From: Salpingoeca rosetta
Taxonomy: Eukaryota > Protista > Choanoflagellata
Assembly (NCBI GenBank): GCA_033442325.1
Contig: JAWQFM010000008.1
Location: 1,895,309-1,959,308, forward strand
Reading direction: 5' to 3'
Length of the DNA stretch: 64,000 nucleotides
In this document: positions 25,310 to 31,085 of the stretch, one piece after another
Position numbering within the stretch: the first letter of the stretch is position 1
How the letters are laid out: each line of letters starts with the position of its first letter
Notes under the pieces: generated by a model
The model's database searches: none
Seen by the model: only the letters and a program-made list of their open reading frames with translations
Told to the model about the DNA's origin: nothing
Position numbers and translations under genes: made by a program

Positions 25310-25812
25310 CTGTAGCATTAAGCATCCCTGCCTCACACACACACACACACACACATGCAGTCGTTGTTGCTGAGTAAATTCTTATCTGGACTTGGGCTAG
25401 CTGCTTTGTCAAGTACAGTCTCAAGCACACGCGGTTTATTGTCGTCTTCTGACACGAAGGGGTGGTTCATTACTCAGAGCAGGACACGCGGGCCGTTTCG
25501 CAATGAGCTGCACCTGCACTCGACAAAAGCAAAGTCGAAACAAAGCGCAAGCGCAACACACCGCGTTCACACCACGTTCTGCAAAGCAACAGAACGGATG
25601 AGTCAACTATAGGCCAGCGTGTGACTGCAACGAGGAGTTGAATTATGAATGCACACAACCAAACACAACGACAGCGATGACGACACCGACGACGGCATTG
25701 ACGGGAAGGCAAGAAGACAACAGGCAAGGAGCGAGGGCACAAAGGGTTCGTTACCACGACGACTTCAACACAGACTGCACCGACGCCGCAGGGGGCGGCA
25801 GGTGTTGCTGGC

Positions 25813-26509
25813 TTAGTCGAAGAGGGAGAAGCCATCCATGTCGTCGTCGGACTCCTCCTCTTCCTCGGGCTCGGGCGCGGCCTCCTCTGCAGCAGGGGCA
25901 CCAGCATCGCCAGAGGCGCCGGCAACGGCAGCGCCGCCAACAGGGGCGCCACCAAGCTGGCACACAAAGACGCTGGACTTTGGGGTCACCATGGTGTGGG
26001 AGATCTGCACGGCACCAGAGTAGCTGGCGTGCTCGAGAACGGTCTGTGAAGCGAGGCGAGGCGCAGCGAGGGAGCGGCAGGCAAAGGGGCAGCACGAGGC
26101 GAAAACGACACGAGGGACAAGGTGAGCGCGAGCAACGAGTCACGAGGGCAAGAGGGAGGAACAGGAGGTGTGTGGACGCAAGCCGTGCAGCACAGCGTGA
26201 GAGCAGGCGAGTGCAACAAACAAGGAGCTGTGGAGCTATCGGTTCATGCGCCCCCCCCCCGCCAACTCTTTAATCACACACAACACACCCACACACGGGC
26301 GTAAAAAAAAAAAAACACACAAAACACAGACACACACACACACACACACAAATGCACAGACACACACAACAGCCCCGGCGCACCTGCTTGAGCGCCTTCT
26401 CGACGGCGAAGAAGTCCTCGCCCTCGGCGGTGAGGTCGGCGGCGGTCTCGCCACGGCCCTTGGCAGTCCACTTGCCGCCCTCGTTCTTGCAGATGAAAAC
26501 GTACACCAT
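25813..26509 (-). CDS. RPP3: 60S acidic ribosomal stalk protein, P3-type (118 aa)
   Basis: Two exons, 26509-26384 and 26043-25813. N-terminus MVYVFICKNEGGKWTAK...GAVQISHTMVTPKSSVFVCQLGG, then an Ala/Gly hinge and the stalk tail EEEESDDDMDGFSLFD. Confidence 0.85.
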
Positions 26510-27159
26510 TGTTGTTGTTATGGGTTGTCTAACTTGGCTCACAAACTAGATATTGTGGGTGTGAGTGTGTGAGTGCGTGAGTGTGAGCATAATATATGCG
26601 TGGGCATGCATACACGGTGGTGTGGTGTGCATTACGACCATGAACAGCATCCGTCGCGTCCACACAGACACACACACAGACACACACACACAGGCACACA
26701 CACACACACACTCACGACAACGCCACAGCTGCCCACCTGGTTGGTTGGTCTTCGTCTTGTTGGCACACGAGCGAGAGGACGAGAGAAAAAGGCACGGCGA
26801 ATCCTGTTGATGCCATGCACGGTTTTTCGCGCCTCGTGGTGTATGTTTCGCACAAGGCGGAGAGGAGAAGTGCATGCGGTGGATAGCATCATCCTCTGCC
26901 CGCACAAAGCAAACGCACAAGAGACAGCCAGTGCCGCTTTCGAGTCGACTGGTGAGACAGGAGGAGATTGGAAAAAGAGGGGAACGACACAAGTGCACCA
27001 CCATCACCACCCACCCAGTCACATACACGCGCAGGCACAGGGCCTTGAGAGTCGCCAACACGCGCCCTAAGGTTGTTCTCCTCATCCCCTTGATTGCTCT
27101 CTGTCTCTCTTTGTGTGTTTTTGGAAAGCACAGGCCCGTGACAGAAACACACCGCCGCC

Positions 27160-29049
27160 ATGTCTCTGAACTGCGCAAGTACGTGCGAACGTTACGCAGT
27201 GGACCAGTGATCTTTGGGCGGGGTCGTGTGCTCGCTGCATTGGCGACAGTAGTGCTGGTGCTAGTTCTGGCGCCAGCGTTGCTGTTGTTGCTGTTGTTGC
27301 TGCTGTTGCTGTTGTTGCTGCTGTTGTTGCTGCTGTCATGCGCGGATTCCTTGCTGACCTGCCCTCCTGTCCAACTTTTGCTCGCACGCTAACGTGCTTC
27401 ATGGGATGGCAGTTTCTGGTGCCGTGCCAGAGCACCCCGTGGTGTCCCCAAAGTCTGGCGCCGTGTTTGAGCGGCGTGTGATTGAGAAGCATCTCCGCGA
27501 CAACCAGACAGACCCCGTCTCTGGCGATCCCCTTGAGGTCGACGAGCTGATCGATGTCAAAGGTACGGGAGTCAATGCATATGTGCGTGAGTGTACATCT
27601 GCACGTCTGTGTTTCCGTGTGTCTGTGTGTCTGTATCTGCCTGTGTTTCGATGCCTGTATCTGCCTGTGTGTATGCGTGCACGTGCGGGTCCATGCGTGT
27701 CTTGTCGGTCTGCTTGCCCCGAAAAGGCTGCATGCCCACAGTCAAAGCGTGCACCCATTGATCTGCAACACCAATTGCCCTCGCCTATGCTGTGACCCCG
27801 CCAGGAGGCGATGTCGTCCAGCCTCGTGCACCAAACGCAACCAGTATCCCATCTCTGCTCAAGACGTTCCAGGATGAATGGGTCAGCTCCAGCGCAATTG
27901 TTGCTGTTTAGTTTGTGTTCTTGCAGGGTGTATGTTTGTCTGCGTGTGTGCTTCTTGTGTGTGTGTGTGTGTCTGTGTGTGTGCGTGTGCGTGTGTGTGT
28001 CTGTGTGTGTGCGTGTGTGTATGTGTGCGAGTACGCGGGTGCGAGACGCCTTGGGTCTCTGTGTTTGTGCAAATGGACGTGCTCATGCCTGTGTGCGCTT
28101 TGTTCTGTGGCGGCCTTTCACGCCTTGCACACGCGCTCAAGCTCACCCCACCACCATTTCCGTGAACTCCGCGACTTCTTCACGCGCACCGACCTTAGGA
28201 CGCCGTCATGCTGGAGTCCTTTGAGCTGAAGAAGCACGTCATGGAACTTCGCCAAGGTCCACATCCCTTGCATGCCCATGCACGTGGGAGGAGGTGGACG
28301 GGTGTCGTTTACTTTGACATGTGTTTGTGTCAAGTGGTCGCTATGTGCTCATGCTCGTTCTTATCCAATCGACGCACGCACGTTTTGGTTCCCATGTAGA
28401 GCTGACACACAGTCTGTACCAGCACGACGCATCTTGCCGTTTGATTGCTCGTCTCACCCGCGAACGCGACCAGGCCCGCCAGGTCTGTGTTGCGCTGTGC
28501 ATGTGCGTGTGCGTGTGCATGTGCTGCGCTGTGTGCATGTATGTGTGTGCTGCATGTTACGTGTGCTTGTCGCCGCTCACCCGCCGGCATATGCTCCCCA
28601 AGTCAGCGTTTGAGTTGTTTGTGGCGTGTCTTCTTGCAGCACAACCACATCTAAAACACACACCCACACGCACTCACGCACACTCATTCTCACACGCTCA
28701 CATATGCTCCTCTCTGTGCTTGTGTGCATGTGTGTGCGATACACAGGCGCTGGTTGCGCTTGAGCAGCAGGCGCCGCAGATGGCGCAGCAGGCGGCCGCC
28801 CCTGCCGAGGCCCCCGCTGCAGCCGAGGAGCAAGAAGGTGTGCGCGCCACACGTTGTTGTTCTTGTTGTTGCTGTTGTTCTTGTTTACGCTGCTGGTTGG
28901 TTATGTTGTCAATTCCAATTCTCATTTTTGTTTGTGTGTGCGTGCGTGTGCGTATGCCAGGACCCCTGCCCGCGGAGGTTGTGGCCAGCATCAAGGCAAC
29001 CCACAAAAAGCTCAGCAAGGTTTACCACGTGCCACCTCTACCCACCTCA

Positions 29050-29100
<51 letters not shown>

Positions 29101-29386
29101 ACACACACACAATTTTCCTACCCTTTCACCGCTAAACGTACCTTTGTCCTTCTGGCTGACAGCAACGCAAGAAGCGGTTCAAGGCTGCCGACTTTCCTGC
29201 AGAGGAGAATGTGAACAAGTACACGTGCCAGAAGACGCACAGCGGCATGCACAGCTCCCGCAGCAAGGCCATCAACGACCTTGCCGTGCACCCGACACAG
29301 CCCAACATTGTGCTCACCGCCGGCCAGGATAAGACGGCACTCGTGTACGACCTCAACTCCGAGGAAATCCTGACCACATACAAGGT

Positions 29387-29455
<69 letters not shown>

Positions 29456-29819
29456 AGCGGAGTCAGGGTTGTGCACATGCCTGTTCGTGAGTAACGCTTT
29501 TTGTGTGAAGATGCGCGTTGGCTTGTGTCTGTACAGTTGTGTTTTGCTCACACTATTCCCGACTCGCCGTGCATGTGTTGCAATTGATTATTGCGCAACC
29601 ACACAGGGTCACAGCAAGAAGGTGACAGCGTGCCTGCTGCACCCAACGCAGGATGTTGCCATCACTGCCAGTGCAGACAACACCGTGCACATTTGGACAA
29701 CCGCCGGTGACACCCGCCACATTATCAAGGTGTGCAGGCTTTTCGCGCGTGCGTGGGTGCTTCTTTGCTTGCTGGCTTACCAACGCGTTCATGCACCTCA
29801 ACAGCACCCTCAAGCCGAT

Positions 29820-29882
<63 letters not shown>

Positions 29883-31085
29883 GCGCGCGTGTGTGGATAT
29901 ATGTGACACTCACACATGGTCCCGCTCTCTATCCATCTGTTCCCAACACAAACTGCGCGCGTGTGCGTGTGTATGTGTGTGTGTGTGTGTTGTGTACATG
30001 TGCACATAAATGCCGTGTGCGGTGTTTCAGGCGCACAAGGCGACTGTGGAGGCTCTGAGCCTGCACCCGACCATGGACTACGTGCTGGCTGCGGATGCCA
30101 AGGGCGTTTGGTCGTTTACAGATGTACTGACGGGCGAGACGCTGTCGACACACAAGGACGAGGAGGCTGCGTCGGGCATCACCTGCGCCCAGTGGCACCC
30201 CGATGGCACCCTGTTTGCCGTTGGCACAAAGAAGAAGTTCGTCTCCTTGCCATTGTTTGTGTGTGTATGTGGGGGGGGGGTAGGTGTGCACGCGTGTGTG
30301 TGTACGGTGTGTGTGCGTGTTTGTTTGTTTGCGGATCAGCTGCTGTACGGTGCTCCTGCTGCTTGCCATCGTCCCCTCACTCTCGTTCCTCTGCTTCCTC
30401 ATGCTTTTCCTCTCCCCCCCCCCCTTCTCTCACACTCTCTTCTGTTACGCCCCTGCAGCACGGTGCGTGTTTGGAACATCAACCAGCACCAGATGCTTCA
30501 GTCGTTTGAGGGCCACGCTGCGCCCATCACGGCTATTGCCTTTTCGGAGTCTGGCCTGCACCTTGCCTCTGCCTCGAGCGACGGCGTTGTGAAGCTGTGG
30601 AACCTGCGCACTCTCGAGTGCCTCAACACCCTCGAGCTCGACGCCGGCACCAAGGTAATGCAAACGCAACCTGGGCAGTACAATGGGCACGAAGTGATGG
30701 GTGCTTTGTGCTGTGTGAGGAATGGATGGCGGTGGGAGTGGCACGTTGCTGTTGCACGTTGCTGTCGGTGTGTTTTGTTCTTTTTCTTCATGGCGTGTGC
30801 TCGTTTTCACCTGCTCCGCTCATCATGACGTTGCGCATGTGCGTGTGTGTGTGTGCGTGTTTGTATGATGACTTGCAGGTGAATGCGCTGTGCTTTGATG
30901 ACACGGGCCGCTTCCTTGCGATTGGCGGCAGCGATTTGAGGATAGTGAATGTGTCCAAGTGGGAGACGGTGGCCACCCATCAGGACCACTCGTCCAACAT
31001 CAACGCGCTTGCTTGGACTGCTGGTGACCCCGGCACCCTCCTCTCAGCCGGTGCAGACAACGCCATCTGCGTCTACACCGTCTAG
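27160..31085 (+). CDS. PRPF19: Pre-mRNA-processing factor 19 (U-box, coiled coil, WD40)
   Basis: [32 protein letters not shown]...TDPVSG (U-box), TSIPSLLKTFQDEWDAVMLESF, ELTHSLYQHDASCRLIARL, then WD40 repeats. Confidence 0.96.

What the first reader, a model, noticed from the sequence alone, without database searches (positions are those of the whole stretch)
25813..26509. Plant-type ribosomal stalk protein P3 in a putative choanoflagellate
Seen: a 118-aa protein with the universal P-protein tail (EESDDDMDGFSLFD) and Ala/Gly hinge, but an N-terminal domain unlike P1 or P2: MVYVFICKNEGGKWTAK...GAVQISHTMVTPKSSVFVCQLGG. Known: as I recall it, plant P3 begins MGVF(S/T)FVCKxxGGEWTAK and contains GGVQSSFSxVxPxSAVFQVIxGG, and P3 is generally described as plant-specific. 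The gene has a native-style TG-rich intron and sits between conserved host genes, which argues against contamination. Inference: P3 is either ancient and lost in animals and fungi, or was acquired horizontally from an alga. Either way it implies a non-canonical ribosomal stalk in a close relative of animals.
Basis: partly seen in the sequence, partly recalled or inferred. Interest (0 to 1): 0.85.

Follow-up and report, generated by a model that had tools for sequence, protein, structure and literature searches.

The report
Plant-type stalk protein P3 in choanoflagellates
Salpingoeca rosetta, a close unicellular relative of animals, has an expressed native gene for ribosomal stalk protein P3, which papers still call plant-specific, and the protein's anchor domain is predicted to fold quite unlike that of the usual stalk proteins P1 and P2.

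Summary
The window is Salpingoeca rosetta. A minus-strand gene (coding exons 26384-26509 and 25813-26043, with a 340-nt GT..AG intron) encodes the 118-aa protein PTSG_03451.

- **Expression:** RNA-seq shows the intron is spliced. It also shows a second intron in the 5'UTR and abundant minus-strand transcripts.
- **Identity:** Residues 1-75, without the tail, hit plant and green-algal P3 and show no P1/P2 similarity. Pfam PF00428 covers only the acidic tail.
- **Other stalk genes:** The genome has separate P0, P1 and P2 genes. All carry the same unusual tail ending, DDDMDGFS(LFD), as this protein.
- **Native gene:** It is single-copy. Orthologues occur in at least four other choanoflagellates. 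Monosiga brevicollis shares the intron position and the head-to-head Prp19 neighbour.
- **Fold:** AlphaFold2 predicts a beta-beta-beta-alpha-beta-beta N-domain. It resembles the HicB/UPF0150 fold rather than the helical P1/P2 dimerisation domain.

Novelty is limited. UniRef already auto-names the S. rosetta and M. brevicollis proteins "P3". Papers up to 2026 still call P3 plant-specific, and none found mentions choanoflagellates.

Two things stay open: the origin (algal transfer or ancient gene with many losses), and whether the protein sits on the ribosome.

The parts
26737..26775 (-). 5' leader exon (non-coding); transcript start near 26775
   Evidence: Read ends pile up at 26775 and the junction 26545|26737 is read in RNA-seq
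26546..26736 (-). 5'UTR intron, 191 nt, GT..AG on the minus strand
   Evidence: 222 and 100 junction reads in two stranded RNA-seq runs
26510..26545 (-). 5'UTR part of the first coding exon
   Evidence: RNA-seq depth and assembled transcripts reaching 26547
26384..26509 (-). Coding exon 1: residues 1-42 (first three strands and most of the helix of the P3 N-domain)
   Evidence: Profile A1 positions 1-44 match here at E 4.5e-15
26044..26383 (-). Phase-0 intron, 340 nt, GT..AG, TG-rich microsatellite; the position is shared with Monosiga brevicollis and with unidentified protist P0008
   Evidence: Junction reads 624+303 and two transcript contigs; intron mapping
25954..26043 (-). Coding exon 2, first part: residues 43-72 (end of the helix and the last beta-hairpin of the N-domain)
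   Evidence: AF2 secondary structure with pLDDT 83-91; profile A1 positions 42-75 at E 1.2e-9
25813..25953 (-). Coding exon 2, second part: Ala/Gly/Pro hinge, acidic block, the conserved Ser and the factor-binding tail DDDMDGFSLFD, then the stop codon (25813-25815)
   Evidence: Pfam PF00428 matches residues 68-117 only (E 1.2e-8); predicted disordered
25570..25812 (-). 3'UTR (at least this far; one transcript contig runs beyond 25500)
   Evidence: Continuous minus-strand RNA depth and contig ends
27409..30947 (+). Context, not part of the gene: Prp19 (U-box, Prp19, WD40), head-to-head with P3; same arrangement in Monosiga brevicollis
   Evidence: Collinear tblastx hits to M. brevicollis locus L010; Pfam U-box, Prp19 and WD40_Prp19; L010 gene table

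Best explanation
PTSG_03451 is a native, single-copy, expressed orthologue of the 'plant' acidic ribosomal stalk protein P3, inherited vertically within choanoflagellates. It has three parts: a folded N-domain of about 72 residues, a flexible Ala/Gly hinge, and the universal acidic P-protein tail. Shown: the homology, expression, gene structure and domain layout. Inferred: as in plants, where P3 co-purifies with cytosolic ribosomes, it probably adds extra copies of the C-terminal tail that recruits translational GTPases (eEF2, eEF1A and others) beside P0(P1-P2)2. The N-domain is predicted to be an alpha/beta HicB/UPF0150-like domain, not the four-helix P1/P2 dimerisation domain. It therefore probably docks differently from P1/P2, and it may also account for the RNA/protein chaperone activity reported for Arabidopsis P3B.
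For: - **Gene model and splicing:**
- **Identity:** 100% match to S. rosetta PTSG_03451, UniRef name 'P3'.
- **N-domain alone, exhaustive search:** phmmer of residues 1-75 against 1.8 billion representatives finds choanoflagellate, green-algal and land-plant P3 (Corylus 'large ribosomal subunit protein P3', E 4.4e-5) and no P1/P2.
- **Non-circular profile:** a profile built only from non-plant sequences still hits named plant P3 at E 4e-9 to 1e-5. The mixed profile finds 205 hits, almost all named P3.
- **Not P1/P2:** PF00428 covers only the tail. hhalign against the S. rosetta P2 N-domain gives probability 0.3%.
- **Other stalk genes:** separate P0, P1 and P2 genes exist; P1 and P2 read EPEPEEESDDDMDGFSLFD and P0 reads the same up to GFS, where an intron begins; P3 reads EPEEEEESDDDMDGFSLFD.
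- **Copy number:** single copy.
- **Vertical inheritance:** phase-0 intron and head-to-head Prp19 neighbour shared with M. brevicollis.
- **Fold:** AF2 N-domain pLDDT 83-91. The best structural matches are HicB/UPF0150 in three searches, and the plant P3 cluster matches at TM 0.87.
- **Plant P3 background:** ribosomal and chaperone roles in PMC3585428 and PMC5557506.
Against: - No proteomic or structural data place the protein on a choanoflagellate ribosome.
- The way P3 attaches to the ribosome is not described in the plant papers I read.
- The HicB-like fold rests on predictions. Structural matches are middling (VIA Z 5-6.7, Foldseek E 0.1-0.5) and no Pfam HicB model matches.
- A complex prediction of two P3 N-domains with the P0 spine gave no verdict.
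Confidence: 0.85

Rival explanations
1. Origin A: the gene entered the choanoflagellate stem lineage once by eukaryote-to-eukaryote transfer from a green alga or another member of the green lineage, and was then inherited vertically.
For: - The distribution is patchy. Only Viridiplantae, choanoflagellates and a few unidentified protists were found in an exhaustive phmmer search and two profile searches.
- No animal, fungal or other named lineage turned up.
- Algal-derived genes are documented in choanoflagellates (PMC4046809, PMC7971027, PMC3494510).
Against: - Choanoflagellate sequences form one group that joins the green side at an unresolved polytomy, so nesting inside green algae is not shown.
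- No intron position is shared with Coccomyxa or Populus.
- The gene is absent from the held supplementary HGT tables for S. rosetta and M. brevicollis, though one file is truncated.
Confidence: 0.5
2. Origin B: P3 is an old eukaryotic stalk component that predates the split of opisthokonts and the green lineage. It was lost many times, including in animals and fungi.
For: - The choanoflagellate and green groups are deeply diverged (about 40% identity) with no shared introns, as expected for old separation.
- Unidentified marine protist sequences (P0019, P0020, P0095, P0008) hint at wider, unsampled spread.
Against: - It needs roughly ten or more independent losses.
- The unidentified sequences fall inside the choanoflagellate group and P0008 shares its intron, so they may simply be further choanoflagellates.
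- No named non-green, non-choanoflagellate carrier was found.
Confidence: 0.3
3. Function rival: the protein is mainly a free cytosolic factor rather than a stoichiometric stalk subunit. It could be an RNA/protein chaperone, or a soluble tail that competes for or buffers factor binding.
For: - The N-domain fold differs from the P1/P2 domain that grips the P0 spine.
- One HicB-like structural match, 3kwr, is deposited as a putative RNA-binding protein.
- Arabidopsis P3B is reported as a protein and RNA chaperone (PMC5557506).
Against: - Plant P3 is found in purified ribosomes (PMC3585428).
- The tail has tracked the lineage-specific tail variant of P0, P1 and P2 in the same genome, as expected if it works in the same factor-binding setting.
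Confidence: 0.25
4. Artefact rival: contamination by algal or plant DNA, a mis-assembled gene model, or a divergent P1/P2 paralogue that resembles P3 by chance.
For: Only the unexpected taxonomic distribution.
Against: - The gene lies inside a contig on record as about 2 Mb long, and RNA runs from several independent studies hold it.
- It has a host-style TG-rich intron.
- It shows conserved synteny and a shared intron with Monosiga.
- Orthologues occur in five choanoflagellate species.
- The tail is identical in style to the host P0, P1 and P2.
- The N-domain hits P3 at E down to 1e-9 with a profile free of plant sequences and shows no P2 similarity.
Confidence: 0.02

Closest known systems
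Plant acidic ribosomal stalk protein P3 (RPP3A/B of Arabidopsis, maize P3; 'large ribosomal subunit protein P3')
   Same: Same length (about 118-125 aa) and the same three-part layout. The N-domain is 40-45% identical, with invariant F5, W14, A28, P63 and V67. The same fold is predicted (TM 0.87 to the plant P3 cluster). It has the same type of hinge and the Ser-acidic-(M)GFSLFD tail.
   Different: It is found in a heterotrophic opisthokont. The tail carries the host-specific MDGF variant. The intron sits after LKQ, whereas Populus and Coccomyxa share one at the N-domain/hinge border and Coccomyxa has a further one after DDTY. Ribosome association is untested here.
Eukaryotic stalk proteins P1 and P2 (Pfam PF00428 Ribosomal_60s)
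   Same: The hinge and C-terminal factor-binding tail are shared. PF00428 positions 47-88 match, and the tail wording is identical to the S. rosetta P1 and P2 tails.
   Different: The N-domain does not match PF00428 positions 1-46 or the S. rosetta P2 N-domain. It is predicted as five strands plus one helix, not the four-helix dimerisation domain of P1/P2 known from solved structures (established knowledge).
HicB antitoxin N-domain / UPF0150 family (e.g. PDB 6g1c, 6g1n, 2yzt, 3kwr, 1wv8)
   Same: The predicted beta-beta-beta-alpha-beta core of the P3 N-domain gives its best structural matches here, in Foldseek (probability 0.97-0.99), VIA-align (Z 5.1-6.7, 59-66 residues aligned) and the ESM Atlas (TM 0.60-0.75).
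   Different: There is no detectable sequence similarity (8-19% identity in those VIA-align matches; no Pfam HicB or UPF0150 hit). P3 has an extra C-terminal strand, is eukaryotic, has no toxin partner, and is fused to a ribosomal tail. The resemblance is at fold level only and may be a common arrangement.

Membership tests
Ribosomal stalk protein P3 | N-terminal domain homologous to that of plant P3 | tested here: met
   phmmer of residues 1-75 hits Corylus P3 at E 4.4e-5 and green-algal P3 at 3e-5 to 5e-5 in 1.8 billion representatives. A profile free of plant sequences hits named plant P3 at E 4e-9 to 1e-5. The alignment has invariant F5, W14, A28, P63, V67.
Ribosomal stalk protein P3 | Flexible hinge plus conserved acidic P-protein tail with Ser and a (M)GF(S/D)LFD end | tested here: met
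   PF00428 at residues 68-117, E 1.2e-8, above the gathering score. PDB P0, P1 and P2 tails match residues 57-118.
Ribosomal stalk protein P3 | A distinct third 12-kDa P-protein beside separate P0, P1 and P2 genes | tested here: met
   P0 is on contig C3, P1 on C7 and P2 on C13 of the same genome. P3 is single-copy on C8.
Ribosomal stalk protein P3 | Physically present in cytosolic ribosomes and released with the stalk proteins | not testable with these tools
   Needs ribosome purification and mass spectrometry. Only abundant, correctly spliced mRNA is shown.
Ribosomal stalk protein P3 | Phosphorylation of the tail serine | not testable with these tools
   The Ser within EEESDDD is present in the sequence. 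Modification cannot be assessed.
P1/P2 stalk proteins | Helical N-terminal dimerisation domain (PF00428 positions 1-46) that binds the P0 spine | tested here: not met
   There is no match to that part of PF00428. hhalign against S. rosetta P2 gives probability 0.3%. The AF2 topology is mostly beta.
HicB / UPF0150 | Sequence membership (Pfam PF15919, PF21748 and relatives) | tested here: not met
   No such family appears at E up to 1 for any of 11 N-domains.
HicB / UPF0150 | beta-beta-beta-alpha-beta fold | tested here: inconclusive
   The best matches in three structure searches are HicB/UPF0150, but Z is 5-6.7 and Foldseek E is 0.1-0.5. Both sides of the Atlas comparison are predictions.

The most novel reading that the evidence does not exclude
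P3 is not a plant invention but an old eukaryotic accessory stalk protein. Its anchor is a HicB-like alpha/beta domain unrelated to P1/P2. It survives in the green lineage and in choanoflagellates and was lost on the animal stem. Choanoflagellate ribosomes would then carry a third kind of P-protein that docks in a new way.
Probability: 0.25. Interest if true: 0.75.

Novelty: new member of a known kind. Interest (0 to 1): 0.55.

Why it matters
P3 is repeatedly described as the one plant-specific cytosolic ribosomal protein family (PMC3585428 in 2013, PMC5557506 in 2017, PMC7075923 in 2020, and a 2026 preprint that excludes it from cross-kingdom analyses for that reason).

Native, expressed orthologues across choanoflagellates show that statement is wrong. 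They raise a clear evolutionary question: an algal transfer of a ribosome-associated protein into the sister group of animals, or an ancient stalk component lost in animals and fungi.

S. rosetta can be grown and, as far as I know, genetically edited. It would give a simple single-copy system for asking what P3 does, which is hard in plants with paralogous copies.

The predicted non-P1/P2 fold of the anchor domain applies to plant P3 too. It reopens the question of how P3 attaches to the ribosome.

Tried and rejected
- **Complex prediction:** two P3 N-domains with the S. rosetta P0 spine segment (L001:1417-1647) scored 0.02 against a mark of 0.34. That is no verdict and no evidence either way.
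- **Large repeat proteins in the phmmer list** (P0003, P0004, P0007, P0010, P0015, P0016, P0022): inspection shows bacterial surface repeats, ankyrin and BNR-like repeats whose scores are inflated by repetition. I rejected them as relatives.
- **Weak Pfam hits:** DUF1828 and E1_dh (E 0.07-0.12) are not recurrent across the family and were rejected.
- **Low-complexity hits:** the own-genome PF00428 matches on C33 and C30 are poly-Ala/poly-Ser frames, not stalk genes.
- **Tree:** choanoflagellates plus unidentified protists separate from the green lineage (98/99). The attachment point on the green side is a polytomy, so the tree cannot tell transfer from ancient origin.
- **Non-plant profile search:** it found no new named lineage, but its word prefilter limits its reach.
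- **Paper searches:** P3 with choanoflagellates, and PTSG_03451, each returned nothing. The original P3 paper (PMC19351) is not held.
- **Unidentified sequences:** the source organisms of P0008, P0009, P0019, P0020 and P0095 could not be named.

Full report
**1. What is in the sequence**

The gene lies on the minus strand.
- Coding exon 1 is 26384-26509 and coding exon 2 is 25813-26043, including the stop codon.
- They are joined across a 340-nt GT..AG intron rich in TG repeats.
- The product is 118 aa. It starts MVYVFICKNEGGKWTAK and ends EEESDDDMDGFSLFD.
- It is identical to protein PTSG_03451 of Salpingoeca rosetta, so the window is choanoflagellate DNA: contig C8 of the assembly, positions 1895309-1959308.

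**2. Expression and transcript structure**

- Two stranded RNA-seq runs carry the 26043|26384 junction in 624 and 303 reads. Transcript contigs from two older, independent studies carry it too.
- The reads reveal a second intron of 191 nt in the 5'UTR (26546-26736; 222 and 100 reads).
- The transcript starts near 26775, and the 3'UTR reaches at least 25570.
- Read orientation fits an RNA made from the minus strand.
- Exon depth is several hundred-fold against about 15-fold in the intron.

**3. What the protein is**

- *Pfam:* PF00428 (Ribosomal_60s) matches only residues 68-117, at model positions 47-88. This is the hinge and tail. Nothing in Pfam matches residues 1-75.
- *Solved structures:* P0, P1 and P2 chains match only the tail.
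The real hits are small P-proteins from:
  - choanoflagellates: Microstomoeca roanoka, Monosiga brevicollis and Salpingoeca urceolata, with Hartaetosiga gracilis added;
  - green algae: Coccomyxa and Flechtneria, with Chromochloris added;
  - land plants, for example Corylus "large ribosomal subunit protein P3" at E 4.4e-5;
  - a few unidentified protists.
- *Profiles:* A profile of 11 N-domains finds 205 proteins, and nearly all named ones are called P3. A profile built only from non-plant sequences still hits named plant P3 at E 4e-9 to 1e-5, so the link is not circular.
- *Alignment:* 36 aligned sequences show invariant F5, W14, A28, P63 and V67.
- *Comparison with P2:* The P3 N-domain profile has no similarity to the S. 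rosetta P2 N-domain (hhalign probability 0.3%).

**4. The rest of the stalk**

The same genome encodes P0 (contig C3), P1 (C7) and P2 (C13). All three end with the unusual wording EPEPEEESDDDMDGFS(LFD). It has an extra Asp before GF compared with the usual DDDMGFGLFD. In P0, an intron splits the final codons. P3 ends EPEEEEESDDDMDGFSLFD.

So the P3 tail has followed the lineage-specific variant of the genuine stalk proteins. This argues that it is under the same selection and meets the same binding partners. The P3 N-domain occurs only once in the genome.

**5. Native gene, inherited within choanoflagellates**

- The M. brevicollis orthologue (XP_001750203) has its intron at the same phase-0 site, after LK(E/Q). 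The unidentified sequence P0008 has a 42-nt in-frame GT..AG intron there, which its gene caller read through.
- In both S. rosetta and M. brevicollis, P3 lies head-to-head with the Prp19 gene (U-box, Prp19 and WD40 domains). In the window this gene is at about 27409-30947 on the plus strand.
- Together with five choanoflagellate species carrying the gene, this excludes contamination and recent transfer.

**6. Predicted structure**

AlphaFold2 with the 36-sequence alignment gives a confident N-domain (pLDDT 83-91 over residues 1-72) and a disordered hinge and tail. The elements are strands 2-10, 13-19 and 27-30, helix 33-48, then strands 54-62 and 65-72.

Three searches agree on the nearest folds:

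| Search | Best matches | Scores |
|---|---|---|
| Foldseek on PDB | HicB N-domains and a UPF0150-type "putative RNA-binding protein" (3kwr, 6g1c, 3k6q) | probability 0.97-0.99, E 0.13-0.47 |
| VIA-align over 48,161 chains | 2yzt, 6g1n, 3kwr, 6g1c, 4p78, 5yrz, 1wv8 fill the top seven rows | Z 5.1-6.7 |
| ESM Atlas structure search | plant P3 cluster first, then HicB-family clusters | TM 0.87, then 0.60-0.75 |

These scores are middling. I read this as a fold-level resemblance, not proven homology. The robust point is that the P3 anchor domain is alpha/beta. It is not the four-helix dimerisation domain of P1/P2 known from solved structures (established knowledge). This holds for plant P3 as well.

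**7. How it most likely works**

- *Shown:* a folded N-domain, a flexible hinge and a canonical P-protein tail, made from an abundant mRNA.
- *Established for the family:* the tail of P-proteins recruits translational GTPases to the ribosome's GTPase-associated centre.
- *From plant papers:* P3 is found in purified cytosolic ribosomes (PMC3585428). Arabidopsis P3B also acts as a protein and RNA chaperone (PMC5557506).
- *Inferred:* choanoflagellate P3 adds extra tails at or near the stalk. It is anchored by a domain that must dock differently from P1/P2.

A complex prediction of two N-domains with the P0 spine gave no verdict.

**8. Origin**

The maximum-likelihood tree of 31 N-domains separates two groups with 98/99 support. 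One holds the choanoflagellates plus P0008, P0019, P0020 and P0095. The other holds the green algae, land plants and P0009. The branch joins the green side at a polytomy, so nesting inside green algae is neither shown nor excluded.

Introns are not shared between the two groups. Coccomyxa and Populus share one at the N-domain/hinge border instead.

No animal, fungal or other named lineage appeared in any search. Sensitivity is limited, since plants themselves score only about 1e-5 with the single sequence.

Algal genes in choanoflagellates have precedent (PMC4046809, PMC7971027, PMC3494510). This gene is not in the held supplementary HGT lists, although one file is truncated. I put a single old transfer at about 0.5 and an ancient origin with many losses at about 0.3.

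**9. Novelty**

UniRef already names both the S. rosetta and M. brevicollis proteins "60S acidic ribosomal protein P3", so databases have made the assignment automatically.

Papers have not followed:
- P3 is called plant-specific in 2013, 2017, 2020 and a 2026 preprint.
- No paper pairs P3 with choanoflagellates or cites PTSG_03451.

I class it as a new member of a known kind. The predicted non-P1/P2 fold is an added point of interest.

Noticed in passing
window 26546-26736 and 26737-26775 (minus strand): The P3 transcript has an unpredicted 191-nt intron in its 5'UTR and a short leader exon. About 600 bp separate its start from the divergent Prp19 gene, so the two probably share a bidirectional promoter.
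   Followed up: partly
window 27409-30947 (+) and L010:2547-5555: The Prp19 splicing-factor gene lies head-to-head with P3 in both S. rosetta and Monosiga brevicollis. This is conserved microsynteny across two choanoflagellate genera.
   Followed up: yes
L010:6001-7129 (Monosiga brevicollis XP_001750203): The database model of 164 aa has a 47-residue N-terminal extension with no counterpart in any other P3. The true start is probably the Met of MVHIFILK (residue 48).
   Followed up: partly
L008:301-696 (Logan contig from SRR23274492): An unidentified protist P3 (P0008) has a 42-nt in-frame GT..AG intron that the gene caller read through. It sits at exactly the choanoflagellate intron position. 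The organism has very short introns and could not be named.
   Followed up: partly
L001 near 1740-1765 (S. rosetta P0, contig C3): The P0 gene has an intron after ...DDDMDGFS, inside the last few codons of the conserved tail. A (GTT)n repeat follows directly.
   Followed up: no
proteins P0019, P0020, P0095: Three unidentified sequences form a tight group with the signature FICTE(A/D)(G/D)GxW(S/T)AKQxND(E/D)K and (A/D)FDLFD tails. P0095 comes from a sea-plankton RNA catalogue (as I understand the source tag), P0020 from an ENA assembly, and P0019 is an unnamed EukProt entry. In the tree they fall within the choanoflagellate side. Their organisms are unknown.
   Followed up: partly
proteins P0003 and P0004: Bacterial-type surface proteins carry tandem repeats of about 50 aa (NICSDEEYTWSVNG...TIEGEDCAADQRLVL). 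They score against the P3 N-domain only because the repeats add up. They are not relatives.
   Followed up: yes
window 26275-26364 and 26657-26725: Long (CA)n/(TG)n microsatellites lie inside both P3 introns. The read tool skipped them as repeats.
   Followed up: no
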